Source of the DNA: Ostrea edulis
Taxonomy: Eukaryota
NCBI RefSeq assembly: GCF_947568905.1
Contig: NC_079165.1
Coordinates: 71,982,001-72,046,000, forward strand
DNA: 64,000 nucleotides
Direction: 5' to 3'
Both the position numbers and the translations under genes were made by a program. The stretch's first letter is position 1. Each line of letters begins with the position of its first letter. Below the pieces are notes generated by a model, which worked only from the letters and a program-made list of their open reading frames with translations, was not told the DNA's origin and made no database searches. Positions 2,346 to 50,000 of this stretch are shown one piece after another.

Positions 2346-2639
2346 TCATCCAGGATGTTTCCACGATCTTTCTATCTACATCGGTCCATGTTATGATCAA
2401 TATCAACCACTTGTATGTCTTGCCAAACGTGACCTTCTTTGTTGAAGTGCTCTGCTATAGGTTCATTCACACGTCTGGTTTTAATGGTTGATGAATGGTT
2501 GTTATTTCTAATTCTAATATTTGTAGTTTCCCAACATATTGTTGGCCACATTGTTTACATGTGATGATATATATCTCAATTGTTGGTTTTACAGAGAGTT
2601 GACACAATATTTCATAACTTTCGCCTGTAGCAAAACTTT

Positions 2640-2803
2640 GAAACGTTTTCGAATCCTGGCTTAAATTGCCCTACTGTTTTTCCCTAAAATAGCTCTAGCA
2701 ACTTTATTGTTATTTCGGTTTTCAAACATTTCGGTTGAGCATCATTGAAGAGACATTATTTGTCGAAATGCACATCTGGTGCATCAAAATTGGTACCGTA
2801 TCA
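2640..2803 (+). mobile_element. Degenerate solo copy of the hammerhead-containing retrozyme repeat
   Basis: TTGAGCATCA-TTGAAGA-GAC ATTATTT GTC-GAAA-TGCACA-TC-TGGTGCATCAA at 2735-2787, homologous to 44034-44086. It has a core C3>T change and a broken stem III palindrome. Confidence 0.75.
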
Positions 2804-2835
2804 GTGTTATATATGAGACTTTTTGTTGTCTTTAC

Positions 2836-7650: not shown

Positions 7651-7721
7651 GTCTCAAAATGATTAAGAAAATCTAAATCCGCATTTAGTAATTGGGGATA
7701 GGATATAGTAACATTACATGT

Positions 7722-7775
7722 AAAACGTATACGGTACCAATTTTGATGCTCCAGATGCACATTTCGACAAATAAT
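7722..7775 (-). mobile_element. Truncated retrozyme/hammerhead remnant
   Basis: tatacggtaccaattttgatgctccagatgcacatttcgacaaataat matches the 3' half of the hammerhead repeat. The CUGANGA half is absent. Confidence 0.65.
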
Positions 7776-11270: not shown

Positions 11271-14200
11271 TTTCCTTCTACGATACGCAAAAAAGGCACT
11301 TACCCACTCTGGTACGTTTTTCATTGGGAATAGTATCTTTTCCCAGATCTCCTGAAACTGATCCGATGCCAATTTCTTGCAGTACTGATATGACGCCTGT
11401 AATATACAGTGTACTTTTCTTCAAAACTGTCAAGGAATGTCAACTGTCAAATGTCAACTGTCATTTCATATTTTGTAAACATGGTATCTTTCCTCGCTCT
11501 CGGTTTCAATCCCACAAGATTTTGACAACTTTTGAGTATGAAATAGTATATAGACGTAAATTATATATAGTAGATTTGACCACGTACCAATTTCATGTCA
11601 TATCCCAATGGAACTATAAATTCTTTATCTTATTCCTCCTATTTCTATTTTGATTTGTGTTTTTATCGAGCTGCCATACTTATGTTGCGCGATCGGACAA
11701 CACAAAATAAAACTCGTTAGATTTCTATCGATAAATAATTGGGAACAATATCTAAGAAAATATAAACACTAAATATTTGACTGAGAAGGAATAAAAAGGA
11801 TGAAACAGGTGTAAATAAGGTATTTATAATTCAGAGCGTCAAGTTAACTCACTTGAAGACAACAATAGCTGGGGATGTGATTTTATCGATCAGCGATGGA
11901 GAAACCGTGGTGTTGTCCTACTTAAACTTAAAGTTGAAAACACAATACTGTACACAAATTTTGACAGGAATTCAGAGAATCTTAGAGAATTCATGGGGGA
12001 TAGATGGATCAGGTTAACGTTAAGCTCTTGGTTAGAATATTGCAAGTTTTGGAAAGGAACAACGGCATGTGAAACTCATCGTTAGGACCCGTGGTTGTAG
12101 CAGTAGCACTGACAGATTTAGATGAGTACAGGTAGGTTGCTTTTTTCCCCTCTAGGGTGTGTAAGAGGAGATAAACACGAACTGACAGAGTTTTTGCTCA
12201 CTCGAGATATTTCAATGAAGATTTGCAGTGGTGCTCTGAGTTGTCTCAGAAACAAGCCTCGCTCATGGCTGACGTTATTGCCCCGAATCAAATACACCAT
12301 AAGTAGATAGGCCTATAATTTCGCTTCCATTTAATTCGCTTCCATTGAAGAATTATTGTCTGTTTACAAAGTAAACTGAATATAAATTTTCTTATATATG
12401 GTCTTTTGGGGGGGGGATGTTTGTTTGGTTTTGATTTTTTTCCTGATACATGTATGTCATTGCGTATGCAAGAAGCCAATGAAAGTACCTAAGACAATTG
12501 AACCAAGTACTTTGGAAGCGGTGATTGTATTCATAGGCAAGACAATTCTGATCACGTGACCGACTTCATGTCATCAAAATTTTAATTATTTGTTCACTTC
12601 AATCTTGACGCTCGTTCAGACAGATATCTGTTTTATTGCCCTACATTAGACACAGTAATTCAATATGTAGACAATCTGTTTGTTCTCAGCTTTTGTGGGT
12701 TTAGTTTTAGTGCTAGTTTACATTTCATTTTATTCAGTGTAGTCTGTAGATTTCATTTCAATGTATATTTTCTGTCATTCTGAAGAAAGGACAGGTCGTC
12801 CCGAAAATTCCACAATTTTATATTGTTCGTGTCGTTAGTCATATTTCGATAATTTTATTGCTTTATAGTTCAGTAAAAACAATACGTTAAGATATAGAAG
12901 ATTAAGGTGGGTGTCAAATGTTGTCTATTTCTATTAAAACAAACCCATAACCTAAATTCCCGTCCATTAAATTTAATGTTGATACCATACTTTGTGTTGC
13001 TGTAGGCATGTGTATTTTCAATACTTACTTACATGTATATAAAAAAAAATTGAATCACCAAATATGAATGTAATTGAGGAATCAATGTCTAGCTTGTGTG
13101 ATAGAGGTATAAAAGCAGTGGAAATATGGAACGATCTCTGCAAGATCGGCCTTGCCGATTATGCAAATTTCCCAGAATTCCATTATTTTCACATCGCCAT
13201 TGATGTAATACAAACAAATTTTACATTCATGAATAACGATGTAATACTAGGGCTAGCATTCCCCAAAATCAAGTCGCATGTAACTACAATATTTTGTGTA
13301 TTTGATCAGCGTTTACTTCCCACCTCAAGAATGTCTGCTAGAAGTTTAATATTCCCTTCTCGTGATCTTCCTTGGTTTTGCGTAGATCCTCCAGGGCTTT
13401 CGTCCACTCATTGTCGTAAAGTCCGAGAATCTCTCGGCGAGGTTTGTCGGTATGTTCTTGTCACTGGGGTCAGCAACCTTTGAATTTGTATCGGTCTGCT
13501 TTTCTCCAGACAATTCATTACCCTATAAGCGTAGTAAATATCTTCAATTACATTTTGCACAAAACGTTTAATCATAGTATGCACACTGTTTATGTTAAAA
13601 TTATGCCATAAGTAACAACCATGGTGACTGCCCGATCTGGCATTTGTTCGTACTGTAAATAACGATGCGTTTTTACCGTATACATATATACATGTATTGG
13701 TATTCATTTGAAACAAAACCATATTTGTTGATATCCCTAAGTTCAAGTGTAGTGTACTTTAATGTAGGTTAGTTGCATGGAGTCGTACATCCCTATACGA
13801 AAACCTTTCATTATTTAAATCGTGCAGGGTCTTTTAGCATACAGTGACATAGAACCTTGCCTTTAAGGAACAGCCGACTTTTACTAATGCCTGGTGCCTT
13901 ATGTCGCGGCGGTCATTTCCTCCTCCTTGGAGAAATCAGTTAGATATAGCTAGCTATGCACAGGAAAATACATATGCATTTCTCCTACAAAGTTACCTAG
14001 ATTTCAGTTTCTCTATTTCTTTTTGCTGTAGTTCTATAAGATTGGCGTTATTGTCTTGACGAGCAGATTCCAGGGGTTTCTCTTCCTCGTCGATGTACTT
14101 TTCTTTACTTCTTACATCATCATTTTTCTCGTTGTGCCTCAATGACAAATGTTTTGGAAGCTCGCGACAAGCTGTCTAACTCTTTGGGACGTCTGGAGAT

Positions 14201-16219: not shown

Positions 16220-17027
16220 CACTAATAAAAGTCTAGAAACACAGATATGTTGACGTTACTTAGCATTTGCATTTCATTTTATAACTGTCTGAAGAGGCAT
16301 TAAAGCCGAAAGCGCTAACAGTGAAATGTTATTCGAGTTTTGTGTTTCTTGACTTTTATTAGTATTTATTGTATCAAATACTGAATTCTTTTTACAAACT
16401 ATATCTATCTATATCTATCTATCTATCTATAACGGGAAACACGGTGCCTATGAGCTATGTTTATACTAAAATATTAAAGTTGCAACTGACACAGATGTTG
16501 AACATATGTACAATTGAGAGGTAGGTAAGTATATGCTCTACATTTCTTCAAGAAATAATTGCTTCAGATTCGTGGATTGTTAGCCAGATATGAGGAAATT
16601 CAGAATTTTCATTCACTTTGTGATCTTCCAGTGAATTTGAAAATACATATGTCGTATGTTAAAAGTGATACTCAATTTGAGATGGACATAATCTAGGTCC
16701 ATCATGTCTTTTCAGAATGGGAATCATATGTAAATGTATAATTTCCTCGAGATGTAGTTAACGGTTGCAAAGTTCGTTTACAATTCAAGATCGGTAATTA
16801 TAAGTGGGGTAATACTATGCACGCGCTACAAATAGACCGAAGGAATTACATGTACATGTATCTGATAATCCAAACAGACCCTAAATTACTGATTAAGATG
16901 TCTTTAACATTATATCACAAATTCCATAAATGTGATTATTAAAAAAGACCTATAGGGGAGAACAATTTTTCAGAAAAAGTCACAATTTGTTATAGGCCTA
17001 TCAACATTCATTGCCTCTTTTGTTGTA

Positions 17028-18472
17028 CAGGGTGTCCCAAAACATGCGTTACACTTTTAATCATCTATAACTTTATCAAAACAAAAGCAATTACAAAGAT
17101 ATTTTGTCAACATCTAGTGTATTAATATGAATTTTATTTGACAAAATTTCGGGAAATTCTGTTAAATAGTCAGTTAATTATGACGTCATAATGACGTCAT
17201 CCCATTTTCAAGATGGAACCTTCATGTGAACAGGTGGCAGAAATTGTCAAACTTTACTATGAGTGTAAATCTGCTACTTTAGTCATTAGAACCATGAAAA
17301 AACAACATCCTGGAATAAAAGTGCTCAACAGAATGCTAATTTACAGACTTGTGAGGAAGTTTGAATTTAAAGGCACCACAAATGACACAAGACGCAATTC
17401 TGGTATTGGGAGACCAAGGAGTGCCCGTACCAAAGAGAACATTGATGCCATTGATAGAGTTATTACTGAAACTCCACAAAAATCAGTTAGACGGGTATTG
17501 CATGAACTGAATGGCACCGTTAGCAAATCTAGTATTCATAGAATGCTCAAATTTGATTTAAAATTGATTCCATACAAGATAAGTGTGATGCAGCATTTAA
17601 AAGAGACAGACATTAGAAGTCGTTTAGAGTTTGCCCATTGGATTTTAAGTAGACCCGACTCTGAAAATTTTACAGATGCCATATGGTTTTCCGATGAGGC
17701 CCACTTCCATCTTAATAATGTTGTCAATAAACAGAATTTTAGATTCTGGGGTTCGGCGAAACCCAATTATATGTGGAAAAACCTCTTCACTGTGAGAAAG
17801 TTACTGTATGGGCTGCATTAAATTCAAGCAGAATAATTGGCCCTTTTTTCTTCGAAGACACCGAAGGCACTGCATCAGTGACGGTAAATTCTGAACGATA
17901 CTTAAAGTTAATAAAATCAAAATTTCTACCAGCTCTTAGACGAAAAGTTGTAAATTTCGATAATGTGTGGTTTCAACAGGACGGTGCTACGCCACACACT
18001 GCAGGTTGTGTTCTTCAGTGGCTTGACAACACGTTTGGTGATCAATACATTTCTTATCGTACCGCAAATGTTTGGCCACCGCACTCCCCCGATCTGAACC
18101 CCCTTGATTTCTTCTTGTGGGGTTATCTAAAAGACAGAGTGTACTCTCCTTCCCCACAAACAACAAAAGACTTAAAAACAGCAATTACACGAGAAATAAG
18201 ATCAATCTCTGTTGATACATGTAAAGCTGTGGTAAAAAACTTCAGAAATCGTGTTCAAATAATGTTAAAGACAAAGGGACGTCATTTGGAACTTATGTTG
18301 TAAAATTACATATATTATTCCGAAGAAAGTTTTTGTTGATTAACAAGGAAGCTGTGACCAATGTATGCATTGACAAAAAATTTAAATCCTTTTTGTTATA
18401 TGTTGTAAATTTCATAATTGTAACTTAAGGTATTAAAATTTTATAACAGTTTAAAAGTGTAACATATGTTTT
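17028..18472 (+). mobile_element. Tc1/mariner-superfamily DNA transposon, DD41D (rosa/Visitor) type
   Basis: TA at 17026-27, then left TIR CAGGGTGTCCCAAAACATGCGTTACACTTTTAA. Right TIR remnant ttaaaagtgtaacatatgttt at 18451-18471 lacks the terminal 12 bp. Contains the transposase. Confidence 0.88.
17213..18303 (+). pseudogene. DD41D transposase with a single 1-nt frameshift near 17770
   Basis: N-terminal HTH region, 'WFSDEAHF', 'FQQDGATPH' and 'WPPHSPDLNPLDFFLWGYLK'. I counted 41 residues between the 2nd and 3rd catalytic Asp. ORFs 17213..17821 and 17773..18303 overlap at ...PNY[fs]VEKPLH. Confidence 0.88.
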
Positions 18473-21816: not shown

Positions 21817-24800
21817 TCACTTTTTCGCTGCTATAACTGAACCCTTTGCTAAAACCTTTCGTCCTTCTTGTATGAGAACTGCAGGCCAGACACACATCGA
21901 CACATACTTTCCACTATCTGAATAAAAGTCGTATTTGTCCGTTTCGACTCTATCGCCCTCAGACGGCCAAATGAGAGCCATGGGTGGATCCTGGACACAC
22001 ATTAGCCATACAGTTTCTATGCACTTGTCTATGTAGTCATTAAGAACACTTGGTAGTTTTGTATGATCCCAACGAAAGTCCTTTTCAATCGTTGTTTCTT
22101 TGAATTTCTATATTTAAAAAAAGTAACGGTGAAATATATTTATTGCCATTTTCGTACAGAAAAAATATCTTCCCTTGCCTTCTCCCCAATCTAAAGTATA
22201 TCAAACTTTGGATGGGTAGATAGAGATAATCTATTTTTTTCAGTAACAATACAATATTGATAAAAGGAATTTTCAAAAGGCATGTTTTTTAGCAGAGCAG
22301 ATTCATCTCATTCGATCGTTGAAGGAAAAAAACCTTTTTTTTTAAATTTAGCTCTTCACACATTTTTTTTTGAAGTAACATGAATATGATTAAATCTGTT
22401 ACAGTAGCTATAAGAACTTTACCGTTTAATATATCAAGGAAAAATAACTCTGAATTCTCGTCCATGTTTTCAGACTAATATTCTACGATTTATCTACCTT
22501 GCAAAGCTGAGGCACCGATATCGTTGCCACTTCTTGACGCAACCCTTTGACGTATTTCATCCCCTTTGATGATAACATCAGACGCTGTTCTCGTGTTGGG
22601 GAACTTTCCTGCATGGGAAAATTTCGTTTCACCTTTTGACAAGAACTTATATTCTTTCTTCTTTTTTTAAAAATAAAAATCGCTTACTAGTATTTTATGG
22701 TAATATTATGGATGTCTGAAGCCTAGTATTGTTAGCATTGAATCAAATTCAAGGATTGATTGAATGATAATAAATCTGATATGTCTGTCTCTTAGTTTCG
22801 AGTTTTGCTTTGTAATTGTATTTTGTTTTTTTAAATTTACATCACTCGTTATGTACCTGAAGAATGTCACCAATAGTAACTCAAACATTGCACTAAACCA
22901 GACTTTATAATTCTATACAAATCACATTATAGATGTACGTAGTGTGATAGTAATTAATGTACGTAGTGTATTATGTTTTACCAGATACGGGAGTTTGATG
23001 GGTTGTAATAAGGGCACTGCTGAGGTTGTGGTCAAATCCAGTAGCTGTCCATAAGCGGCGGTTTGGCAGAACGAATACGCATACTGAAATAGAGACCAAT
23101 AAGACTTATCGTACCTCCACTGCAACAATTGTCAACCCCTAAATAGAGAGCAATAAGACTTATCGTACCTCCACTGCAACAATTGTCAACCACTAAATAG
23201 GATCAAAGGGTTTTTGCAATATTGCTCAATCCACTGTTAACTATACTGTTTGAGTAGTGTCCTGCAGCATTATTACAATTAACAAGACAACTGAATATTT
23301 CGTTTTGCAATATTGAAAGAATGTTGTCACTTCGCATTTTAAGCTGCAAATCTACAGTAATGAATTAAGAAATATATATAGACCATGCTCGGTTTTCATC
23401 GATGATTAAAATAATTTTAAATGACATAATGTTTACTTAATTTACCCGTATAATTCTCATGAGGTTGTACATAATTTCGTTGTCTTTTCCTTGGTTCCAT
23501 AAGTTCATTTCGTGATAAGCACGTTCATACTCGTTGTCCCGGATGTTTTTAAATCGTTTGGTAATTTTGAGGACTTTGCTGAGTGTTGTCTCATCATCTT
23601 CTGGTCCACCACCCAATCTAAAAATGGTGAACTCAAAACTTTCACTTACATGTACTGTATTCAGTTTTTAAATTTCGTTTGAATCCAGAACTAAAACTCA
23701 ATTTTTCTGTTCAAAACCTGAAGAATTGATAATTAAGTTCACAGTCTTGGTTTGTTCATTAGTCTTCAAATTGCAATTAAATACTAGTATAAATGATGTT
23801 TTGATTTGATATTTTAGTTCCGAATCGAAATCGACATCACTTGATACTGCATCACCAAACAGACGCTTAAATGCCACCCAGTTGACATATGACGAAGCAG
23901 TGACACATAGATATGAATACGGTTTACTGGGATGCTTTACGCTTTCGGCATTGTAATGATACCTTTTGGTGAGTTGGTCAATCTTAGACTGCTGGAATTC
24001 CACTGTCCTGAGGACGTCCTCGTAGTCACTGATTGAGGACCCTGTCAGCGACCGCCTGCTGGGTTCACTGCGAGAAGTCTTCTTACCATGCTTGTTCCGG
24101 GGAGACACCTCCATAATTGTCATTCTTTTGGGAAGGTATCGCGCAGGTAACTCCTGCAGAATGTTTAATTGATATAAGGCAGGTAACTCCTGCAGAATGT
24201 TTAATTGATATAAGGCAGGTAACTCCTGCAGAATGTTTAATTGATATAAGGTAGGTAACTCCTGCAGTATGTTTAATTGATATAAGGCAGGTAACTCCTG
24301 CAGTATGTTTAATTGATATAAGGCAGGTAACTCCTGCAGTATGTTTAATTGATATAAGGCAGGTAACTCCTGCAGTATGTTTAATTGATATAAGGTTGTG
24401 TCATTACTTCATGTGTACAAAGGTTTTATGTATACTTTGAATACATTGCATACTGAGCATACACGTGCACACTAGCCTGAATGTAAATCCTGTGTTTGTA
24501 CATGTACAAGGAAAATCAATGAATGAAGCAAACCATTACTCCTATTATAGACTTGTACTTCTACCCTGGATGTCACTTTCGTTACCATGATGTGATGAAA
24601 TTAGTCATTTGATGACAGTAGTAAAACGATGCAGGTACTAACCACTTTATTTTGCATATTTATTAGCATTTTCTCGGATCTTTTGAGTGAATTGTACTCG
24701 TACAGCGCAGTTCCGGAAGTGTATTTATTGATACTGGGTTCCCGGCATGCAGTCATCAGAACTTCTTTGAGTTTGCTTTTAGGACCAATCTCTGGGCCAT

Positions 24801-29947: not shown

Positions 29948-32900
29948 TCAAAATGCTTGTACAACACCTTTGGACATCATCGTACCATTCTCGTGTAAAT
30001 ACAGCGTCGGCCAGACAGTAAAGTTGACCACCTTTCCATGATCTGTATATTTATACTCTTTCAGATTATCGTTCATTTCTGAACCTTCATCGTGCCAAAA
30101 TAGTTTCATGGGCGGATCCTGAATTGAAAATAACCAACATATTCGAACACAGCTTTCTATGTATGTCATTATTTCTTTGGATTTATCCCATCCAATTTCT
30201 CTTAAACCCCCGCCATGCGTATGTTTGAAGATCTACAATTAAAATCAATTCATTGTTATTGATATATTATGTTAAATGTAATCACATGAAATGTTTCTTT
30301 TTAAAAAAACCATTCACAATCATTGTTAAACGCAAAACTAGATACATCAACAATAACTAGCAGTTAGATAGGATAATACAGGCTGCCATTGCTTTAGGGA
30401 AACACTAACATGTTTAGGAAATCTATTTACCTCTTGAATGGCGGGTAGAGCATAGACACCCGTGTCCTGTTGTATCTGACGAGCTGTAGGCTGCAGCATC
30501 TTCTCTGTACTGGGTTCTACTTCCGCCTAAATAAGGATTATAGACTTAATGATAATCAATATGAAGATGTTATCAATTTGATCAACTTTGAGCATTGATA
30601 ATGAAATATAATCTACATGATATGAAATATTGAAATGATGCGTCATTGTTAACGTAATTTAACTGATACGTGTATTTAGAAAACTCACAGCTGATTCCGC
30701 TACTCTTAATGGATGTACTAGTGCCTCTGTTATTTTCCCTCTATGTTTTCTAGCTTGTTCACGGCATAATTCATATGCTAACTGTAAGAAATATTAACGA
30801 TACGTTATACATACGTCATTTCCGTGTCCACAGAATCCTTGACAAACCCTCCACTCTTCTCATCAATTTACTATGATGATTTTAGAGAAGAAAAAGTTCG
30901 CTCCAAGCACTGATAGAAAAGCCAAAAAACTGCTTCTCTGGTACATTGTAATTTTCTTTAGCGATTCACAGTAAAATCTATTTTTAAGGCCCGAGTTTAA
31001 ACACTGAATTCCTTTTATCATAAATTTCTCTTCTGATCTGTTGATTTTCTGCAATCGTTCCTCACAGCAGCCATTTTGTGAAAGGTTTAGATGCTCTTAC
31101 TTTGAGTCATACTAAAGCAACATTGTATAGTACATGTATCAATAGTCTGTGATGTAAATAGTGCTCTCTTTCCTTTAGTAGTTAATGATAGAAATCATCT
31201 GCTAACCAAATACAACTGACAAGGGGTTAATCCAATTCATTTTGCCCTGGATTCATGGCCTTGATTTGTTGTTGCTACCCATCCTTTTTTGTGGGCAGGC
31301 AATATTTTTATGCTAGTCTTTTTACATATGTGTACGCAATAGTGGGTCATCATGTTAAACCCCTTATCGGATGTTTTTATTTTGTGTATATATGTTCTCT
31401 TTCTCGATGTTAATTTTATAGATGTAAGTAACAGGGGGTCATCTAGTCATTTGCAGCATATGATCTTAATTTTACTTGGTTTTAATGACCCCCTGTACTG
31501 TATATACTTTTCGTCATTTACCAGATAAATGACATTTTCTATTCTCAAACTTGTTCTGATTTGCCTGCTTTGAGCAAAAACAAAAACAAAACAAAAAAAC
31601 AACAACAACAAAAAAACGAGTGCAGTCCACTTGGCTAGTGCTTTTGAGCTAAGGATCATAAGATAGTTAATGATAGAAATAATCTGCTAACCAAATACAA
31701 CTGTCAATAAATATTACATTAATGAAGTTTCACTGATATCATTAAGAAAGTTAATTAGTTAAGAGCCGATACCTTGAGTATTTTTCTACAGTATCTTAGT
31801 AACATCAGAAAGTTGCACTGGCTATGAGACTGACTGTAAACCGCCACGCTCCGTGGTCTCTTCAGAGAATCGTTTGGTATTTGTTACATGTATATAATTC
31901 GACATGTTATTTTGTCATAATCTTACCATTAACATTGTGCTCAATTTCTTTATTATATCTTCTTCGTTTCTTATCTGGCCACTATTCTTTAATGCTTCGA
32001 AAGCGTCAATCCACTCTGTATTGTATAGTTCTTTGAAGTCCTCGGCCAATTTTGTTGGACTGTTTACGATACTAAGATCTATAATAGACGGACTGTTGTC
32101 TTTCGATTTTTTCTCGACCATATAACTGCTTAGACTGCAAATATGATAGAAAAACTTTTTACCTGTCTGAATACAGTATACAGCTTTAAATTCGCTCCTG
32201 GTTATTTTCATGGTTTCTTGTTTAAATCCCTTTTCACACAGCTTTAATTCACCCTTTAGGTGTCCATGTTTTACGTCATAGCTAGGTTTTAATACTGTAG
32301 CGAATAAAGGTTGTATACACTGAGCCTATGAACAGTTACGCGTCCCACAGCTCTTGATTTACGGTGAATTTTACCTTGTTTCGTCATATTCACTGGATCC
32401 CGCATGATCGGAGTTCGCTGATTCTTTAGCTGGAACCTTATTGAGATTTTTATGAAAATATGAAAAAAGTAAATAGTCATGATAACGGAAAGCATAATTC
32501 AAATGTAAAAAAAAAAACCCAACAAGAATAGCATTAGCACATTTATACTGTCATTATAATTATTATAGTATGATATCATTATAATGATTATGGTTCAAAT
32601 TGACTTGAACATAAAAGACAATATAATATACAGTCTAACCTTCTACAGTCAAGCCTAGAATATTTGAGTTACATCTTTAACCTACATGTAAGTGTGCCTA
32701 CTTTATAAATCGTTTACGTACATCGACAAGAGAGGTAGTTACAGTTGTTTGTCTTTGAAGGAAATTTTGATACTCCTTCAAAAGATTGTGATATTTCTCT
32801 TCACCGTCCGCCTTATATTTCAGGACTTCTTGGAGGTGTCTAGCCTGAGCAGCGACCAGAAGCTTTGTAATATCTCTCTACAAAATGAATTGTACTGATA

Positions 32901-34207
32901 CGAAAACGCTCCTGGTGCAGGATAAGATAGAAATATCAAAACAGAATGCCTACTGGAGATCCACGGCTGCATATATGTATGAGAGGGAGTATGAAAGGTG
33001 AAGATAACGAACAGTGATCAATCTCATAACTCCTATAAAGGTGAAGATAACGGACAGTGATCAATGTCATAACTCCTATAAAGGTGAAAATAACGAACAG
33101 TGATCAATCTCATAACTCCTATAAAGGTAAGATAACGAGCAATGATCAATCTCATAACTCCTATAAAGGTGAAGATAACGGACAGTGATCAATCTCATAA
33201 CTCCTATAAAGGTGAAGATAACGGACAGTGATCAATGTCATAACTCCTATAAAGGTGAAAATAACGAACAGTGATCAATCTCATAACTCCTATACAGGTG
33301 AAAATAACGAACAGTGATCAATCTCATAACTCCTATAAAGGTTAAGATAACGAACAGTGATCAATCTCATAACTCCTATAGAGGTGAAGATAACGAACAG
33401 TGATCAATCTCATAACTCCTACAAAGGTGAAGATAACGAACAGTGATCAATCTCATAACTCCTATAGAGGCGAAGATAACGAACAGTGATCAATCTCTTA
33501 ACTCCTATAGAGGCGAAGATAACGAACAGTGATCAATCTCATAACTCCTATAGAGGTGAAGATAACGAACAGTGATCAATCTCATAACTCCTACAAACAA
33601 TACAAAATAGAGAGTTGGGCACACACGGACCCCTGGACACACCAGAGGTGGGATAAAGTGCCAGGAGGAGTAAACATCCTCTGTCGACCGGTATAAATTG
33701 AATTGAATTGAAAAGTGTTTAACGTCCCTTTCAAGAATATTTCACTCATATGGAGACGTCACCACTGCCGGTGAATGGCTGCAAACTTTAGTCCTATTGT
33801 CGGCGCTTATGGCCACTGAGCAGGGAAGGATCTTTATTGTGCAACACCTGCTGTGACACGGGATCTCGGTTTTTGCGGTCTCATCCGAAGGACCGCCCCA
33901 TTTAGTCGCCTCTTACGACAAGCAAGGAGGTACTGAGAACCTATTCTAACCTGGATCCCCACGGGATAGGGAGTATAAAGAATTTAGAACATTACATCCT
34001 TTATCATGAATGTGTAAGAAGGACTAACAACTGGGTATCTGATCAGCTTACCTGTGTATCAATGGACAAAATAGGCAAGACCTGGCATATTGTCTTGAGT
34101 TCTTGAATGGCCGTGTCTACATCCGATGAACTGAAATCGCTCTCATAATATTTACCATGATGGAGTTTATCAAAGACTTTCTTCAAAGAAGTGTACTTTT
34201 CAGACAT
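29948..34207 (-). CDS. Mieap-like paralog D (about 350 aa)
   Basis: Exons: 34207-34052, 32877-32718, 32429-32375, 32134-31927 (DLSIVNSPTKLAEDFKELYNTEWIDAFEAL), 30781-30689 (LAYELCREQ), 30526-30431, 30232-29948 (CWLFSIQDPP...VWPTLYLHENGTMMSKGVV). All GT-AG and phase-compatible; 1053 nt open. Confidence 0.88.
32994..33690 (-). repeat. About 14x43-bp tandem array of the PLE 3' terminus, followed by a short PLE body
   Basis: Unit aaaggtgaagataacgaacagtgatcaatctcataactcctat from 32994 to about 33595, then ...caatacaaaatagagagttgggcacacacggacccc. Confidence 0.92.
33700..33966 (-). mobile_element. SINE-like repeat, copy 2
   Basis: Same family as 3366-3597, with an (aattg)n-type tail on the left. 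Confidence 0.65.
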
Positions 34208-36972: not shown

Positions 36973-39900
36973 TCAAACTGGTTGAACAACACCCTTGCAC
37001 ATCAAGGGACCGTTCGCGTGAAGGTACAAAGACGGCCAAACGACAAAGCTGATTACATTTCCCCGCTTGGTAAATTCAGTCAAGTGGTCATCCACTTTAC
37101 TTTGTTCCTTTGGCCACAACAATTCCATGGGTGGGTCTTGAATAGCAAATAGCCAACAAATGCGAACACAGTTTTCTAAATAAGTCATTATTTCTTTAGA
37201 ATCATTCCATTCGTTCTTCTTGATTTCATCTTCATGTTGGTTTCTAAATATCTGCAAATTAGATTACTTGTAAATATACATGTATGTGAATTACATATGA
37301 ATTGATATTTTAAAAAGCAAATATCACATGATGCTTGTATAAACATGTATGGAAATATTTTCAATCTTATCGAATGTTTAAATCATGAATTAAAACATCG
37401 CACTATAATTCAAACGCAAATCAATTTTAATTAACCTTGTCCAATTTACATTTTTATCCAAAAAAGGTAGAAAATTATAATCAAAAGTGAAGAGAACGAA
37501 CAGCGATCGATCTAATACCTCCTATAAGCATAACAAAATACATAATTGGGCAAACACGGACCCCTGGACATATCAGAAGTGGGATCAGGTGCCTAGGAGG
37601 AATAAGCATCCCCTGATGACCGGTCATACTCGTCGTGAGCCCTATATCCTGATCAGGTAAATGGAGTTATCTGTAGTAAAAATCAGTGTACCATGAACGG
37701 CCTAATGATCGGTATGAAACACGTCAGACAGCATTTGACCTAATGATAGGTTGTATTGGCAAACTAGATCGTTATAACGACCATAATGCAAATTTCTGTC
37801 TACCTCTTGAATGGCTGGTATGGCGTAAACACCTGTTTCTCGTTGTATTTGACGGACTCTTGGGCGCAATAGTTTTTCAACATTAGGTTCCACATTGGCC
37901 TACAAAATAAGAAGTTAATGTTTTATAATTCAAAATAATAAGCCGGTACAGATGATGTTAATAAGACTTGGTGGTTACTAAAACCCCATCAGTAAACCAA
38001 TGCAGTCATTCGGATATTCAGTTTTAAAACATCTAAAATTCACAAGTGGATATGCACAATTTCAGCTAATTCGCAAATACATAGGATATGAACGTTTCAA
38101 TTGTAAATTACCATTACAAAACATTTTTGAAATTAGCACATGTAATGAATAAATTGTTATACGTTTAATGTTACATGAATGCCCACGGATGAAATTAGCA
38201 CAAGCAATGAATAAATTGTTATACGTTTAATGTTACATGAATGCCCACAGGAATAAATTGTTATACGTTTAATGTTACATGAATAAATTGTTATACGTTT
38301 AATGTTACAGGAATAAATTGTTATACGTTTAATGTTACATGAATGCCCGCAGGAATAAATTGTTATACGTTTAATGTTACATGAATGCCCACAGGAATAA
38401 ATTGTTATACGTTTAATGTTACAGGAATAAATTGTTATACGTTTAATGTTACATGAATAAATTGTTATACGTTTAATGTTACATGAATGCCCACAGGAAT
38501 AAATTGTTATACGTTTAATGTTACATGTATAAATTGTTATACGTTTAATGTTACATGAATAAATTGTTATACGTTTAATGTTACATGAATGCCCACAGGA
38601 ATAAATTGTTATACGTTTAATGTTACATGAATAAATTGTTATACGTTTAATGTTACATGAATGCCCGCAGGATGAACTAAAGTTTCCTGTATCTTATTTC
38701 TGTGAGTTCTTCCTTGGTTACGACAAAACGTGTAAGCCATCTGAAAAAGGAGTATTAAAATAAATGTAGTAAGCATTGTGAAACGTCAAATTTTCGATAA
38801 GATATAAATGTATATCCAGATATACTGCATGTAAATAAGAAAACAGTCCAGTTTAGATGTACAGTCGATATCAGTAACTTTATTACCAACTTCCGTTATT
38901 GTCTTCGCTTATCATTATACTCTTACTTTAAGATTGAAACTTTTTATTAAATCTGTCCAATGTTGTTTCCCCCACCTTTAACATTTTGCCTAATTTCTTT
39001 ATTATTTCTTCTTCGCTTTTCATTCCTGACTTGCTTTGTAGTGCTTCATAAGCACTCGTCCACTCGTTGTCGTATAATTCTTTGAAATGTTCGGCAAGTT
39101 TGGTGGGCCTGTTCATATCACTAAGATCTGCGATGGACGGATTGTTGTCTCTCAACTTCTCCCCGGCAACTTTGCTTAGTCTGAAAATGTGTGTTTATTC
39201 AGAGTGATTGATTGACATTGTTTAACGTACCTCTCGAGAATCTGACACTAATGTGGAGACGTCACCACTGCCGGTGAAGGGCTGCAAAATTTAGGCCTAT
39301 GCTCGGTGCTTAAGGCCTTTGAGCAGGGAATGATCTTTACCGTACCATGCCTGCAGTGGCACAGGACCTCGGTTCCGAAGGACCGTCCCATTTAGTCGCC
39401 TCTTACGACAAGCAATGGGTACTGAGGACCTATTCTAACCCGGATCTCCGCGGGACTGTATTTATTCAAAAAGTAATTGAAAACCTAAAATCAAACGTAT
39501 TAACAGAAGCTACGAGTAAATTTCACGAAGTTCAAACACATCACGCATTTTTAATCGGTTTTATCATATTAAAATATACCTCTGGTATATCCAGGGGTCG
39601 GTGTTTGCCTAACTCACTATTTTGTATTGCTTACAGGAGTTATGAGATTGATCACTGTTCGTTATCTTCGCCTTTCATATCAGGAAGTACTTAGACATCC
39701 TCTTAAATGACTATAGTCCAAATATACAGCATGTGCTTTTTTAATTAGATGAAAAAATGAAGATGATGATCCTATAGAGAATACAAAATTAAGAGTTGGG
39801 CAAACACGAACCCCTGGATATACCAGAGGTGGGATCAGGTGCCTAGGAGGAATAAGTATCCCCTGTTGACCGGTCACACTCGCCATAAGTCCCATGTCTT

Positions 39901-42900: not shown

Positions 42901-43153
42901 AAAAAAATAAAACAAAATCAAAATATATTTAGTAGCGATTTATGCAAGAATATAAACATAAAAACCGATGTGAATAACACACCGACAATGATTGTACCTG
43001 CATATCTGAGGAAATGGCGGGCACTGCCTGACAAATAGCCGAGAGTTCTCGTTTTGCAGTTTCTACATCGGAATCGCTGAAGTTTTGCTCGTAATATTCT
43101 CTTCTATCAATGCATTCGATGACTTTCTTTAAATGACGGTATCTGTCAGCCAT
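36973..43153 (-). CDS. Mieap-like paralog E (about 320 aa as modelled; extra 5' exons possible)
   Basis: Exons: 43153-42998 (MADRYRHLKK...), 40957-40827, 39180-38976 (LRDNNPSIADLSDMNRPTKLAEHFKELYDNEW), 38740-38645 (MAYTFCRNQ), 37899-37804, 37251-36973 (CWLFAIQDPP...VWPSLYLHANGPLMCKGVV). Closest to paralog D. Confidence 0.85.
37480..37785 (-). mobile_element. PLE 3' fragment in the last intron of paralog E
   Basis: Encodes ...GRYNDLVCQYNLSLGQMLSDVFHTD and the family UTR. Confidence 0.78.
38147..38670. repeat. About 14-unit minisatellite (30/42-bp variants) seeded at an exon end and donor site of paralog E
   Basis: Unit gaataaattgttatacgtttaatgttacat[gaatgccc(a/g)cag]. On minus it reads ...GTAACATTAAAC|gtataac. 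Confidence 0.92.
39205..39455 (-). mobile_element. SINE-like repeat, copy 3
   Basis: ggagacgtcaccactgccggtgaagggctgc...ctattctaacccggatctccgcggga. Confidence 0.65.
39580..39675 (+). mobile_element. Short PLE 3' end (opposite orientation to most copies)
   Basis: cctctggtatatccaggggtc...gagattgatcactgttcgttatcttcgcctttcat. Confidence 0.75.
39750..40345 (-). mobile_element. Longer, diverged PLE 3' fragment
   Basis: On minus it encodes 'KLITQLHDKRDYSSFSITYFPHLWSNTPLSPACGVYASQLIRYARTC', then the UTR. Confidence 0.75.
42240..42700 (-). mobile_element. PLE 3' fragment (well conserved)
   Basis: Close match to the reverse complement of 1880-2345. Confidence 0.8.
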
Positions 43154-44033
43154 ACTTCAACAAGAACCTGTTTCTCTTGACAAATCAAAAACATAGTGGA
43201 ATTGCCTAATGCCAATTATGTGTACAGTAATAGCAATTTGAATTTTAAAGAATAATGGAGATAATAGAAGTATTTTCATAAATATTTCGTTCAAAATTAT
43301 AAATGTAAAATCAATTACATGTAATGTTATGCCATAATTGTAACTTTGTATTGATGAAATGTTCTGAGCACGATCGACTATAGATGTAAACACTTACCTG
43401 CACTTGTCACGATCTACTTCCTGTTTTGGTTTCACGGGATTGTCATAGCAACAGCGATACAACAGACCGAGAGGCTCTTTAAAGGGAATATATATACTTG
43501 TTTATTTCTATTAGAGTTATTTCCATATCATGCACTATATCAATCCTCTCGTCGATTTTTTTAAAAGACCGAATTACAACGTTTTCAATTACGATCTTTC
43601 ATTGCTGGTATGTAATACTGGTGCACATTGTTGGTTGTTGTAACTGCAGTATGTATCTGTTTCACAAATCTAGTGTTAACATATACTACACTGCAGATAT
43701 ATGCGTGTAAAATGAAAAGGAAATGATGTACGACATGTGTATTGAATATTTAATCAGTGAGAATCATGCTGTGACATTCCTCTACTTTACCCCCCAGTCG
43801 ACCTTCCTCTACTGTCAACTTTCCGTAGGGGAAATTCTACTAAATAGTAATTTTCCGGGTGAAATACTGCTGGAGTTAATTATCGGGAAAAGATTATGGA
43901 GAGAAAAATCCGACTTTATACGCTCCTGTTTGGAAAACGTCATTTCTTTCTACATAATATTGGAGAGTCTCACTCGTACCTTGTGCATGTCAAACCTTAG
44001 ACATTAGAATGTAAACCTTATACGGTACCAATT

Positions 44034-44086
44034 TTGATGCACCAGATGCGCATTTCGACAAATAATGTCTCTTCAGTGATGCTCAA
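44034..44086 (-). ncRNA. Type I hammerhead ribozyme (downstream copy)
   Basis: 5'-TTGAGCATCA CTGAAGA GAC-ATTATTT-GTC GAAA TGCGCA TC^ TGGTGC A TCAA-3'. Intact CUGANGA and GAAA core, AUC triplet, stem I GCATCA/TGGTGC plus TTGA/TCAA, stem II GAC/GTC, palindromic short stem III ATGCGCAT. Cleavage predicted between 44045 and 44044. Confidence 0.88.
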
Positions 44087-44382
44087 CCGAAATGTTTGAA
44101 ATCCGAAATAACAATGAAGTTTTAGAGCTATTATAGGGGAAAACAGTGTGCCAAAAAGTGGAGTCAAATTCGTACAAGGATAAGAGCTATGCGTGAGGGA
44201 GATAATCATTAATTTTTAAATGAATTTCTAAATTTTATAACAGCAATTAAATATACATCCGTATTTTCAAGCTAGTAACGAAGTACTTAGCTACTGGGCT
44301 GTAGAGACCTTCGGGGACTAACAGTCCACCAGCAGAGGCCTCGACCCAGGGGTCATAATGTAAAACTTATACGGTACCAATT

Positions 44383-44435
44383 TTGATGCACCAGATGCGC
44401 ATTTCGACAAATAATATCTCTTCAGTGATGCTCAA
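44383..44435 (-). ncRNA. Type I hammerhead ribozyme (upstream copy)
   Basis: Identical to the other copy except stem II GAT/GTC (C>T gives a U-G wobble). Cleavage predicted between 44394 and 44393. Confidence 0.85.
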
Positions 44436-45064
44436 CCAGGTAGTGGATTCTCCAAATGTTCTGTAATTAGACTGAGAGTCGCGGGTCTTTAGGATGTGAC
44501 CTTAACAAACGGAGATCCGGTGTCACGGCAGGCGGGCCCTCACTACTACGCCGTGAGAGTCAAACATGTGTGCAGTGTATGCAGATGGTGACTTCTCAGT
44601 TTGAGTGAAGAATATCAAGGGACCTACAACAACTGAAAAATAACGACTCCATTACATCATAACAACACTTAGCTAATCACTTTATGACAAGGTTTCCCTT
44701 ATCGTGGAGTTTAATTGTTCAATATTGCATTTGCAAAGGAACGAAAGTGCATGTAGCCTACACCTGAATTAACCGTTATCAGCGTGAAAGTGTTTCCAGT
44801 CCTGTTTGCTATTCTTTGTGTCTACTTCAAGGCATTAGACAGGGACACGCATATCTAATTACACCTTTATATTTACATTTCCAAGGTTTTTACCTTTGGT
44901 ATCTTTAAAAATTATAATGAAACCTATTTCCTCATGAATGCGCTGCAGTTGTGAACTATGCGCGTATGAATCTTGACAGATATAGTACATCTGTATTTTA
45001 ACAGCTGGGAATTCCAACAGAAATGAAAATAGAATGTAAATACAAAAAATTAATTTCAGTCTTG

Positions 45065-47002: not shown

Positions 47003-50000
47003 TTAAATTTTACGTTCGTGTGGGAAAACGTATCCCTTGCTTACAATCGGCCCCCTACTATGCAAGAACAACACAGGCCAGACTGATATTTTCACAATGC
47101 TCCCCTTGGTTTTGTATAATTTGTAATAGTCTCTATTTATTGTCTCCCCTTCTGTCGCCCACGTGATGACCATAGGCGGATCTTGAATGCACATCAACCA
47201 CGTCAGCTCTATACAAACGTCACCATAAGCAAGGATTGGTTTAGGAAGTTGGCGGGGCTCCAGTTGAAGTTTTTGTCTCAACACTTGTTCCCTGAAGACC
47301 TACACCACAGAAAGTTATTCATAATCAATGACTATGTACAATGTACATGCTTTTCAAACAATGTCTCCAATGATTCTTATATTTAACAAGGTACTAATTT
47401 CAACGGTTTCAGTTTTGTTGTCCTTTGGTCTTCGATAACACTGGTTTTAGAATAATTACTTTTTTATTATCTATTTACCCAGTACATTTTTGTTGGTTTG
47501 CGGGTATGGGTGTTTTTTCTTCTTTACTGAGTCTAATGTATCAATATTAACGTTGATATATACATGTACAAATAATCAAAATAACTGTCTATTTCAATGA
47601 ATTTAAAATTGGGTAAAATGAAGATTTAATATTAAAGAAAACATTTTGATTCTTTAAATGTCCTCTACAATGTTTAACTAGCACTTCCTGTTATTCTGGA
47701 ACAGACTTCAACCCTGTCGCCTCTTTCAATCCTTCCTTTCTATTCCTCAGTATTGAAAACAGCTTTACTTTCGCTCTTGTTTAGTTTGCTGTTTATTATT
47801 GAAACATATTTACAGTGTGAAATTAACATGTTGGGTAATTTTATTTCAATCGTTACTACAATTAACATTTTGTAAATCAGCAACAGATTTTCTACTTTAT
47901 TACTTTCTAAATTCTTTAATCATTTTGTGTATAGCTTCAATTGTAATTTAGGTGAAAATGTCGAGGCTGTTATTGTTTTAAATCCTTCGTACTGCAAACA
48001 AACTAGAAATTTTTGTCAATACAGTTCTGGAAATGTTCAGTCTTCTGAAATACCCCCCCCCCCCCAACCACTCTGCTTGGAACAGAAAAAGATAGATAAC
48101 ACGTGCAGATATAAAATCTAGTTTGCCAAAAGATGTTGCTTTTTTAAAAAATTTGTTGTTGTTTTTGTTGTTGCTTTGTTGTTGTTTTTTTGTTTTGTTT
48201 TTTTTTGCAAACAATACTACAGTGTATTTTGTGATTTGATGTTTTGTTCTTTACATGAATAAACAAGTCGATATGTGGAATTGAAATTAAGATGAGTACG
48301 TTTATCAAGAAATAAAATACCTGATACATTGAAACAATATAGATACATGTATATGTTGGATTTTTTTTTCAAATTACAAGACATTAATAAATATAAATAT
48401 TTCTCAAATAGATTTCAGTCCTGATAATGAATTTGGATTATAACCACAATAAACATTTCGGTCTAATAAATCAGGAACATTTTTGAATTATTTTTTTTTA
48501 AACCCTTTTTGCAAAGTACAGTATCTCTTATAGTTTAGGACTTACACCTCTACTGTCTTTTTAAATTATTTTTATTATCACAATTTGTTATTTTAATTTT
48601 TCATTGAATTTGTTTATATTCATAATTCACTGTAATTGATTTGCCATAAATTCTTTCTAAAATCTTTACCCACAATTTACCTCTTGTAACTCAGGAACGG
48701 TTTTGATCCCTGCCGCCTTTCTGAATTCTTTGGCATGCCTGCTGCACACTGATCTCAATGTTTTCCCTAGGCTTTCATCCAGTCGTAAATCAACTGAACC
48801 GATAGACAACTTCAGATTTGTCTGAAAATATTCACATATTAAATTTCTAATAAAATTACAATAAATACGTCTCACTACTGTAAAACATACAGTGGTGTTT
48901 TTTTTTCCATAAGTTAAAGATTGTTTGCCTACCGAGCTTGTCATTGAAGTGCCGAGGGATGGAGACAGGTTAAGAATATGTCTCTCCATTGATTGCGCTA
49001 AATCCGAAAGCTGAGCTTCTGATTTCTTTTTGCAGAAGTCGTAGGCATACTATTTTAAGGTAGAGAAATATGATGCATCTACATGTACTGAACAAAGCTC
49101 AATATGATATTTTAATATGGAAAACTTTAGTTGAAAGATGATTTATCAGAATTCTAATCATCAATGGAAAATATGGCTTTATTGCTTTCATACTTGTCAG
49201 TTTCTCGTTTTATTCATTTAAAGAATTATACCCTAAGTATTCTGAGAAGAACCCGCAGACATTCGTCCTCTGTGTATTTGAGCTGTGTATGGAAGGCGTC
49301 GTATGCATCAGACCATTCCTCGTCGTACAAACATCCAAACTTTTCTCCAATTTTTGTCGGTCTGTTCTTGTCGCTTAAGTCAGCCATGTTAGGGTTCCCA
49401 GCTAGTAATTGCTTGCTGGCGAAACTACTTAATCTGTAAATAGTCGAAACAAAGAACTAAATGATGGAAACGTCATTCTTCTCTTTAATGAACATGACAT
49501 CAATTTGTCCTTTTCATTATGACAACTGAAAAACTACAATTGTATATTCATCTTTATCTTATATATATATTTCTATTCTTCAAAGAGCTTCACGAGTTTC
49601 ACGAACCTCGTCGTCAGCTCATCTATTTGCATTTCCTGTTGTTTGACTTTTCTGTGCAGACGGTCGTACTCCTCTTTCGATATGAAGATGGATCCAGATC
49701 GGTATTGACTTTTGTATGCTTGTGATGATGGAGGTCTTGAGTACCTGTCATTGCCGGTTCCTTTGATAAAGCTAGTACTGAAGTCTTGTTTATTTGCGGC
49801 AGCAGTCCTCTCCTTGTTCAGTGCTATAGTAACTTCGTGTCCAGTATGAATGACTTTCATCGGACCTCCTTTCGGTAAACCGTGATGGTGAGGTGTAGGA
49901 GTTGATGGTCTGCGTTTTACGAGAACGGATCCACTTAGAGTTTGTTTCAATTTTGCTTCCCTTGGAGAGCCAGGCTAAAATTTTACATCAAATAATAATC

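What the first reader, a model, noticed from the sequence alone, without database searches (positions are those of the whole stretch)
44034..44435. Tandem hammerhead ribozymes define a 349-nt retrozyme predicted to make a circular RNA
Seen in the sequence: two nearly identical type I hammerheads on the minus strand. Each has a full CUGAAGA/GAAA core, an AUC cleavage triplet, a 10-bp bulged stem I and a 3-bp stem II. Stem III is very short and palindromic (ATGCGCAT). Predicted cuts at 44394/44393 and 44045/44044 release a 349-nt monomer. Established: minimal hammerheads with palindromic stem III (newt satellite-2 type, PLE-associated) cleave as dimers, and tandem-hammerhead non-LTR retrozymes of a few hundred nt give abundant circRNAs in some invertebrates, including mussel. 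Inference: this is a viroid-like, non-coding, self-cleaving mobile RNA. The two ribozymes could pair through the palindrome, and it may be mobilised by the Penelope-like RT whose fragments surround it. It lies just upstream of paralog E on the same strand, so read-through or 5'-extended transcripts would be cut.
Basis: partly seen in the sequence, partly recalled or inferred. Interest (0 to 1): 0.92.

Follow-up and report, generated by a model that had tools for sequence, protein, structure and literature searches.

The report
Oyster hammerhead retrozyme copy
This is one ordinary copy of a very abundant, non-coding mobile repeat of a bivalve genome. The repeat carries a self-cutting hammerhead RNA motif and inserts like a Penelope-like retrotransposon, a kind of element already described in mussels and other animals.

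Summary
Two type I hammerhead motifs lie 349 nt apart on the minus strand, with predicted cuts at 44394/44393 and 44045/44044. Rfam Hammerhead_1 aligns end to end with both but scores below its cut-off (31.2 and 28.7 bits against 34). It appears only when about 70 nt are searched.

The locus is one 430-nt insertion, not a true tandem array. It consists of the last 44 nt of a unit, one full 349-nt unit, and the first 37 nt again.

The family is very large. The ribozyme 41-mer matches 14,157 places in the 895-Mb genome, which I estimate as about 11,600 insertions. Every copy examined ends 32-41 nt after the predicted cut and starts at a different unit position, with unrelated flanks. This is the insertion pattern of Penelope-like elements (PLEs). 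Autonomous PLEs of this genome carry the same kind of hammerhead, 45-49 nt from their own 3' ends.

I read it as a non-LTR retrozyme, that is, a non-autonomous PLE. That class is known (Cervera and de la Peña 2020), so this is a new member.

A circular RNA is not shown. One RNA library gives a closed 380-nt contig, but DNA carry-over from so many copies could explain it. No PLE reverse-transcriptase fragments surround the site. This scan has flagged the same family many times on other windows.

The parts
44008..44437 (-). Whole insertion, 430 nt: unit positions 306-349, then 1-349, then 1-37
   Evidence: BLAST of the 349-nt unit against the locus. The flanks differ from those of all other copies. 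Public-run contigs cover only this stretch, and the flanks have zero depth.
44394..44437 (-). 5'-truncated partial unit (unit 306-349). It supplies the 5' strand of stem I, the core, stem II and helix III of the upstream hammerhead.
44381..44437 (-). Upstream hammerhead. Predicted cut after C at 44394. Stem II has a U.G wobble (GAU/GUC).
   Evidence: Sequence. RF00163 28.7 bits, model 1-45/45. My descriptor hit.
44045..44393 (-). 349-nt unit between the two predicted cuts (GC 38%, non-coding)
44032..44088 (-). Downstream hammerhead. Predicted cut after C at 44045.
   Evidence: Sequence. RF00163 31.2 bits, E 1e-6. Fold and dimer co-fold.
44008..44044 (-). 3'-terminal 37 nt after the cut. This is the fixed 3' boundary of the family (...GTATAAGTTTTACAT).
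   Evidence: The 27 independent insertions among the 30 sampled loci end at unit position 32-41, mostly 36-37.
2673..2816 (+). Second, older copy of the same family: unit 247-349 plus 1-41, 90-92% identical, one decayed hammerhead. It lies head to head, 12 nt from a PLE GIY-YIG fragment at 2347-2661 (-).
7718..7775 (-). Third copy, truncated to 58 nt: unit 328-349 plus 1-36

Best explanation
The stretch is one insertion of a young family of a 349-nt, non-coding retroelement. The family is a non-LTR retrozyme, which amounts to a non-autonomous Penelope-like element (PLE). The ribozyme 41-mer matches 14,157 places in the genome, which I estimate as about 11,600 insertions.

Shown here:
- Each unit carries a metazoan type I hammerhead whose helix III is too short to fold alone (2 bp plus a GCGC loop) and is an 8-nt palindrome. 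Two copies can form the double-hammerhead.
- Insertions have a fixed 3' boundary about 36 nt after the predicted cut.
- Their 5' ends are variable, they hold 0.2 to 3.7 units in register, and they have no poly-A tail and no clear target duplication.
- Autonomous PLEs of the same genome carry hammerheads of the same design, 45-49 nt from their own 3' boundaries.

Inferred life cycle:
- Copies with two or more ribozymes are transcribed.
- The two hammerheads pair through the palindrome and cut.
- The 349-nt piece is ligated to a circle, or stays as processed linear RNA.
- A PLE reverse transcriptase/GIY-YIG endonuclease starts cDNA synthesis at the site 36 nt 3' of the cut junction.
- It runs a variable distance, around the circle or by jumping between RNAs, and this gives the 5'-truncated partial tandems.

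This copy lies between two MIEAP-domain genes. It is a 1.23-unit product of that process and has no visible promoter of its own. It would release the 349-nt RNA only if transcribed from upstream.
For: Motif.

Family size (pattern counts, reversed-pattern controls all 0):
- ribozyme 41-mer, 14,157
- unit 1-30, 17,051
- unit 271-300, 9,389
- unit 41-70, 5,405
The counts rise toward the 3' end. Subtracting 5,405 from 17,051 gives about 11,600 3' ends. Probes were calibrated.

Insertion anatomy: 27 independent loci with 3' ends at unit 32-41, 5' ends from unit 4 to 307, and unrelated flanks. The three copies in the window follow the same rule.

Not a piece of a bigger element: no PLE protein similarity within 1.5 kb of any of the 30 loci, and no similarity of the unit to 22 PLE loci apart from two independent copies.

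PLE parallel:
- The GIY-YIG search gives 1102 candidates with open frames up to 973 aa.
- PLE families A, B and C have hammerheads with palindromic helix III, and their insertions end 49, 45 and about 45 nt past the cut.
- With palindromy not required in the descriptor, 3 of 3 hammerhead families found were palindromic.

Literature:
- The retrozyme class and mussel circRNAs (PMC7229834).
- Palindromic helix III and the dimer (PMC4209133).
- PLE 5' truncation, partial tandems and terminal extension (PMC8557442).
- Retrozymes as PLE derivatives (bioRxiv 10.64898/2026.07.22.740005).

RNA: contigs in libraries of two studies on record as RNA (X1 and X3 of one, X7 of another) lie only on the element. 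One is 380 nt = 349+31, a closed cycle.
Against: - Both Rfam scores are below the gathering cut-off, and the motifs were missed in normal-size searches.
- No cleavage, circle, RNA end or strand is shown. The run data are contigs only, and about 14,000 genomic copies make DNA carry-over a sufficient explanation.
- The circular fold is no more stable than shuffles (z = -0.55, 56% paired), unlike the 'highly self-paired' retrozyme circles described.
- No autonomous partner with a matching 3' end was found among the 22 PLE loci sampled.
- The sampled PLE families insert into (TA)n or (CA)n microsatellites; this family does not.
- In 4 of 27 insertions the 5' partial unit belongs to a different variant set than the next unit. 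Rolling-circle copying of one circle cannot give that.
- The hammerhead is no better conserved among copies than unit positions 37-150 (1.2-1.3% against 1.4%).
Confidence: 0.78

Rival explanations
1. Same element, but the hammerhead is a passenger. The repeat is a PLE-dependent, SINE-like sequence copied from ordinary linear transcripts. Partial tandems arise from the PLE integration mechanism (template jumps, heterogeneous tandem source genes). No circular RNA takes part.
For: - Chimeric in-register tandems in 4 of 27 insertions.
- No 5' ends at the cut site in the sample.
- The hammerhead is not more conserved than neighbouring sequence.
- The circular fold is unremarkable.
- Craig et al. 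note that Naiad PLEs thrive without canonical hammerheads (PMC8557442).
- PLE-type hammerheads cleave poorly in vitro (PMC4209133).
Against: - Intact core, stems and palindrome occur in three unrelated hammerhead families of this genome and in thousands of young copies.
- Mussel retrozymes of the same size do form abundant circles (PMC7229834).
Confidence: 0.15
2. A satellite or tandem repeat, or a SINE moved by a LINE, that merely contains a hammerhead-like string.
For: - Short AT-rich unit (GC 38%).
- Some arrays reach 3-4 units.
- No target-site duplication beyond chance.
Against: - Thousands of dispersed single insertions with unrelated flanks, a fixed 3' end and graded 5' truncation.
- No poly-A or simple-repeat tail.
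- No tRNA-like head.
- No Rfam tRNA, 5S or 7SL match.
- The descriptor is expected 0 times by chance in 64 kb.
Confidence: 0.04
3. The two motifs are the pseudo-LTRs, or an internal piece, of a larger protein-coding Penelope-like element at this site.
For: PLEs with hammerheads in their terminal repeats are common in this genome.
Against: - No PLE protein similarity within the window nearer than 41 kb.
- The flanking ORFs have no RT or GIY-YIG domain.
- Homology to other copies stops sharply at 44008 and 44437.
- 0 of 30 family loci have PLE coding sequence within 1.5 kb.
Confidence: 0.02

Closest known systems
Non-LTR retrozymes of metazoans (Cervera and de la Peña, NAR 2020, PMC7229834), especially the Mytilus galloprovincialis repeats of 350-390 bp
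   Same: - Type I hammerhead in each unit.
- Non-coding unit of a few hundred nt with low GC.
- Thousands of copies, dispersed and in short tandems.
- Autonomous hammerhead-bearing PLEs in the same genome.
   Different: - No circular RNA or cleavage is shown here.
- The predicted circle is not unusually self-paired.
- Most copies are single 5'-truncated insertions with one ribozyme, not arrays.
- Sequence homology to the mussel family could not be tested. The held supplement contains none of four short strings from this ribozyme.
Penelope-like elements and their non-autonomous derivatives (Craig et al. 2021, PMC8557442; Li, Clavereau and Pollet 2026, bioRxiv 10.64898/2026.07.22.740005)
   Same: - Strong 5' truncation.
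- Partial head-to-tail tandems that form a pseudo-LTR.
- A hammerhead a few tens of nt from the 3' boundary.
- No poly-A.
   Different: - No ORF.
- No detectable sequence similarity to the 22 PLE loci sampled.
- No microsatellite target preference, unlike PLE families A, B and C here.
Hammerhead ribozyme type I, Rfam RF00163 (newt satellite 2 / Schistosoma Sm-alpha design)
   Same: - Full CUGANGA...GAAA core, with C17.
- Open stem I and G10.1-C11.1.
- Helix III modelled as a loop-less palindrome, as in the Rfam consensus.
- End-to-end model alignment.
   Different: - Scores of 31.2 and 28.7 bits are below the 34-bit gathering score.
- Stem I is longer (10 bp with a bulge).
- Loop 2 is AU-rich and lacks the usual loop 1/loop 2 contact nucleotides, as also reported for mussel (PMC7229834).

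Membership tests
Hammerhead ribozyme type I (RF00163) | Conserved core C3-U-G-A-N-G-A9 and G12-A-A14, with a cleavage nucleotide that is not G | tested here: met
   CTGAAGA ... GAAA ... C17 in both copies. All core columns match in the CM alignment.
Hammerhead ribozyme type I (RF00163) | Three helices around the core, with stem I open | tested here: met
   Stem I has 10 bp with a bulge and stem II has 3-4 bp in the MFE fold. Helix III is 8 bp only in the dimer.
Hammerhead ribozyme type I (RF00163) | Score at or above Rfam's gathering cut-off (34 bits) | tested here: not met
   31.2 and 28.7 bits. No hit in whole-window or 1.1-kb searches.
Hammerhead ribozyme type I (RF00163) | Self-cleavage at the predicted site | not testable with these tools
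   Needs in vitro transcription of monomer and dimer constructs. The run data are contigs without RNA ends.
Non-LTR retrozyme | Short (about 170-400 nt) non-coding unit with one type I hammerhead and low GC | tested here: met
   349 nt, GC 38%. The longest ATG ORF is 63 aa and is intact in 1 of 30 units.
Non-LTR retrozyme | Multiple genomic copies, including head-to-tail repeats | tested here: met
   14,157 ribozyme matches. Arrays of up to 3.7 units. This locus has 1.23 units.
Non-LTR retrozyme | Expressed as a monomeric circular RNA | tested here: inconclusive
There are no raw reads, and DNA carry-over is not excluded.
Non-LTR retrozyme | Highly self-paired circle | tested here: not met
   Circular MFE -67.8 kcal/mol against shuffles -65.1 +/- 4.9 (z = -0.55), 56% paired.
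Non-autonomous Penelope-like element | Fixed 3' end, variable 5' truncation and partial tandems | tested here: met
   The PLE hallmark is as described in PMC8557442.
Non-autonomous Penelope-like element | Hammerhead near the 3' end, as in autonomous PLEs of the same genome | tested here: met
   The boundary lies 36 nt past the cut here and 49, 45 and about 45 nt in PLE families A, B and C.
Non-autonomous Penelope-like element | Sequence similarity to an autonomous family at the 3' end | tested here: inconclusive
   None to the 22 PLE loci sampled. These are a small part of 1102 candidates, and no more genome sequence could be fetched.

The most novel reading that the evidence does not exclude
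The hammerhead cut ends may be the points where the Penelope-type reverse transcriptase jumps from one RNA to the next. Two observations suggest this. The 3' boundary sits at a fixed 36-49 nt past the cut in this retrozyme and in three autonomous PLE families. Some tandems are exactly in register yet made of two different variant lineages that switch around the cut. If so, ribozyme processing would explain how PLE pseudo-LTRs and retrozyme multimers form, with or without a circle. This family of about 11,600 young insertions would be a natural data set to test what hammerheads do for PLEs.
Probability: 0.2. Interest if true: 0.65.

Novelty: new member of a known kind. Interest (0 to 1): 0.36.

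Why it matters
The class is known, so this locus alone adds little. The family has some value for three reasons.
- It is a very large, young hammerhead retroelement family in a chromosome-level bivalve genome (my rough estimate is 0.3-0.4% of the assembly).
- Its insertions show in clean form the PLE signature of fixed 3' end, graded 5' truncation and in-register partial tandems. This supports, on anatomy rather than co-occurrence, the current proposal that animal retrozymes are non-autonomous PLEs.
- For annotation, Rfam at normal settings misses all of these ribozymes.

For the neighbouring MIEAP-domain gene the practical consequence is small. A same-strand self-cutting motif 855 nt upstream of the ATG could trim read-through transcripts, but nothing shows that it does.

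Tried and rejected
- **Rfam on the whole window and on 1.1 kb.** Blank. The speed filters lose the motif. The 71-nt searches recovered sub-threshold RF00163 matches.
- **tRNA or SINE head.** None.
- **PLE RT fragments around the site.** Not found.
- **Search for the autonomous partner.** The unit was compared with 22 PLE loci and no similarity was found.
- **Target-site duplications.** The mean shared word is 2.4 nt, against 2.5 nt in mismatched flank pairs. None beyond chance.
- **PLE coding sequence next to retrozyme copies.** 0 of 30 loci. Two retrozyme copies inside 140 kb of PLE loci is what chance predicts.
- **Coding potential, including rolling translation on a circle.** Rejected.
- **Extra conservation of the ribozyme among copies.** Not seen. 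This is uninformative for dead copies of a young family.
- **Literature.** No paper on an oyster hammerhead retrozyme and no paper holding this ribozyme sequence. The held mussel supplement contains none of four short strings from this ribozyme.
- **Reads.** Only Logan contigs were on offer, so RNA ends, strand and level could not be read.

Full report
**1. What is in the sequence**

On the minus strand the stretch reads GGTTGAGCATCA-CTGAAGA-GATATTATTTGTC-GAAA-TGCGCAT-C|TGGTGCATCAAAA from 44437 downwards. It reads the same again, with GAC for GAT, from 44088 downwards.

Counting bases puts the cleavage cytosines at 44394 and 44045. The repeat finder gives an 81-nt direct repeat (44008-44088 and 44357-44437) at 98% identity and spacing 349.

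ViennaRNA folds the minimal motif into a 10-bp bulged stem I and a 3-4-bp stem II. Helix III cannot form alone, because it is 2 bp plus a GCGC loop. As an 8-nt palindrome it pairs between two copies: the co-fold is -35.3 kcal/mol against 2 x -11.8 for monomers.

**2. Is it more than chance, and is it a hammerhead?**

Rfam found nothing on the whole window at gathering scores or on 1.1 kb at E<=10. When only 71 nt were given, so that the filters are laxer, RF00163 (Hammerhead_1) aligned over its whole length, model positions 1-45 of 45:
- 31.2 bits, E 1e-6, at 44039-44082;
- 28.7 bits, E 7e-6, at 44388-44431.

Both are below the 34-bit gathering score. The Rfam consensus itself models helix III as a loop-less palindrome, which is the same design.

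A descriptor of my own (core, stem II >=3 bp, palindromic helix III, H17, stem I >=5 bp) found three sites in the window. These are the two motifs here and a different one at 16289-16317. It found none in 200 simulated 64-kb sequences with the same dinucleotide content.

With palindromy removed from the descriptor, every hit in about 200 kb (PLE loci plus the window) still had a palindromic helix III. There were three unrelated sequence families: AATT, AGCGCT and ATGCGCAT. This matches the metazoan type I design of Cervera and de la Peña 2014, which is thought to act as a dimer (PMC4209133).

**3. The locus is one insertion of a huge family**

The window is G000:C2:71982001-72046000 of an 895-Mb, 52-contig genome. 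A DNA search with the 430 nt gave 3030 first-look candidates, and the top 43 scored matches cover essentially the whole query at 96-97% identity.

Whole-genome pattern counts, at <=2 mismatches and with reversed-pattern controls all 0, were:

| Probe | Matches |
|---|---|
| Ribozyme 41-mer | 14,157 |
| Unit 1-30 | 17,051 |
| Unit 271-300 | 9,389 |
| Unit 41-70 | 5,405 |

The probes were calibrated on my sample of loci. The difference between unit 1-30 and unit 41-70 gives about 11,600 3' ends, that is, insertions. The counts rise toward the 3' end, which is what 5' truncation predicts. Probe sensitivities differ, so these are estimates.

I mapped the unit onto 30 fetched loci, 27 of them independent. 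Every insertion ends at unit position 32-41, mostly at ...GTATAAGTTTTACAT at position 36-37. Each starts at a different unit position, from 4 to 307, and holds 1.1 to 3.7 units in register. The flanks are unrelated.

This sample was biased toward copies longer than one unit. The three copies in the window itself are an unbiased mini-sample. They are 430, 144 and 58 nt long, and all end at unit position 36-41.

So the locus is [unit 306-349][unit 1-349][unit 1-37]. The 'tandem hammerheads' exist because truncation happened to fall at the first base of stem I. There is no poly-A tail, no target duplication beyond chance, no tRNA-like head and no conserved ORF.

**4. Link to Penelope-like elements**

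The GIY-YIG profile finds 1102 candidates in the genome, with open frames up to 973 aa. In 22 fetched PLE loci I found hammerheads of the same design but different sequence.

| PLE family | Description | Hammerhead | 3' boundary past the cut |
|---|---|---|---|
| A | 787-aa ORF, 3717-nt tandem unit | ...CTGAGGATTATAAAATGAAAGCGCTT\| | 49 nt |
| B | Long stem II with an extra A before it | Helix III AATT | 45 nt |
| C | Also present in the window at 16289 | Helix III AGCGCT | about 45 nt |

All three run into (TA)n or (CA)n microsatellite. The retrozyme boundary is 36 nt past the cut and is not in microsatellite.

Strong 5' truncation, partial tandems forming a pseudo-LTR, and hammerheads near the 3' end are the published hallmarks of PLE insertions (PMC8557442). 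Retrozymes have been proposed to be PLE-mobilised (PMC7229834) and, in Xenopus, shown to be related to PLE pseudo-LTRs (bioRxiv 10.64898/2026.07.22.740005).

The unit has no sequence similarity to the sampled PLE loci, so the partner is unidentified. More genome sequence could not be fetched.

**5.

No PLE reverse-transcriptase fragments surround the site. tblastn of 19 PLE ORFs against the window hits only 2347-2661, a GIY-YIG fragment. The flanking ORFs have no RT or GIY-YIG domain. None of 30 family loci has PLE coding sequence within 1.5 kb.

The gene context is right. The window holds tandem genes with MIEAP (mitochondria-eating protein, Pfam PF16026) domains on the minus strand. The last-exon matches are at 47006-47284, 36991-37197 and four more places. 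A first exon starts with the ATG at 43153. The element therefore lies between two paralogs, on their strand, 855 nt upstream of that ATG.

**6. RNA**

Twenty-four public runs hold the stretch. Five are on record as RNA. I laid four runs on 43700-44750.
- Contigs cover only 44008-44437, and the flanks have zero depth.
- The RNA libraries X1 and X3 (one study) and X7 (a marine metatranscriptome) hold the element.
- X1 has a 380-nt contig on 44038-44415. That length is 349+31, the signature of a closed cycle in a k=31 graph, which means a circular or tandemly repeated template.
- Many other contigs run from the element's 3' boundary into unrelated sequence, which are genomic junctions.

All data were contigs, so ends, strand and level cannot be read. 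With about 14,000 genomic copies, a small DNA carry-over or read-through transcription would give the same picture. The circular RNA is therefore plausible by analogy with mussel, where circles reach up to 1% of RNA (PMC7229834), but it is not shown. The predicted circle is not unusually structured (z = -0.55).

**7. Mechanism and an unexplained point**

A fixed start 36 nt downstream of the cut is awkward for a cleaved linear monomer, which would end at position 349. It fits a template in which the cut junction is intact. That could be a ligated circle or an uncleaved multimer, with the reverse transcriptase starting at a defined internal site and falling off at variable distance.

Repeated parts within one insertion differ by 3.2%, against 4.6% between insertions. 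In L006, L010, L020 and L030 the 5' partial unit carries a different, recurrent variant set than the adjacent unit and is 6-13% apart from it. The two full units of L006 differ by only 2 of 349. In the two loci examined for it (L006 and L020) the switch maps between unit 325 and unit 84 of the next unit, that is, around the cut.

One circle copied by rolling-circle synthesis cannot produce that. Possible explanations are template jumps between ribozyme-processed RNAs, heterogeneous source arrays, or in-register insertion beside an older copy. I could not separate these.

**8. Verdict**

- **Observation:** confirmed.
- **Interpretation:** right in kind (hammerhead retrozyme, PLE-linked), wrong on the surrounding RT fragments, and unproven on the circle.
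- **Novelty:** the class is established (PMC7229834, PMC4209133, PMC8557442 and the 2026 preprint). I found no paper on this family or on oyster retrozymes, so I file it as a new member of a known kind.
- **Prior flags:** the scan's own notes show the same family flagged many times on other windows of this genome. There are 145 notes with the word 'retrozyme', and an earlier follow-up also concluded that only the 3' end is fixed.
- **Organism:** the runs are labelled as mollusc, and the scan's earlier notes call it an oyster. I did not verify the species.

Noticed in passing
window 16289-16317 (+), also L041: A different minimal hammerhead (CTGAAGAGGCATTAAAGCCGAAAGCGCTA|ACAGTG, helix III AGCGCT). 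It sits beside a (TA)n tract and its 3' boundary is about 45 nt past the cut. In L041 two such motifs face each other on opposite strands. Rfam does not see it even on 86 nt. Its core and loop 2 are the most similar to the retrozyme ribozyme among the PLE types seen.
   Followed up: partly
window 2347-2816: A 5'-truncated PLE GIY-YIG fragment (minus strand, 2347-2661) lies head to head, 12 nt away, with an older 5'-truncated copy of the retrozyme (plus strand, 2673-2816). This could be a joint inverted insertion or chance nesting. Such adjacency was absent from 30 other family loci.
   Followed up: partly
L006, L010, L020, L030 (5' partial unit against the next unit): In-register tandems built from two different variant lineages of the 349-nt unit. 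The switch lies around the predicted cut site. This is not compatible with copying one circle.
   Followed up: partly
L043, L045-L047, L051 (PLE family A); L033-L052 (family B): Apparently intact autonomous PLEs with 787-973-aa open frames, in 3717-nt tandem units or inverted pairs. They are inserted in (TA)n. Family A has two alternative ends, 49 and 97 nt past its hammerhead cut, which may be the published terminal 'tail' extension.
   Followed up: partly
window 6154-47284 (-): Six matches to the C-terminal MIEAP-domain exon (6154-6348, 9343-9564, 21820-22089, 29960-30181, 36991-37197, 47006-47284) and two first-exon matches (34049-34207, 42932-43153). This is a tandem array of MIEAP-domain paralogs on the minus strand.
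   Followed up: partly
window 720-1358 (+), 17213-18303 (+): ORFs with Phage_integrase (tyrosine recombinase, perhaps a DIRS or Crypton-type element) and with HTH plus DDE_3 domains (a Tc1/mariner-type transposase).
   Followed up: no
window 10030-11355 (+): Two overlapping long ORFs (441 aa, and 424 aa at 10059-11333); the 441-aa one has no Pfam match.
   Followed up: no
unit positions 151-305 (window 44089-44243, minus strand): This part of the unit is 2-3 times more variable among copies (3.8% from the majority base) than positions 1-150 and the ribozyme (0.9-1.6%). It carries the recurrent variants that define subfamilies.
   Followed up: no
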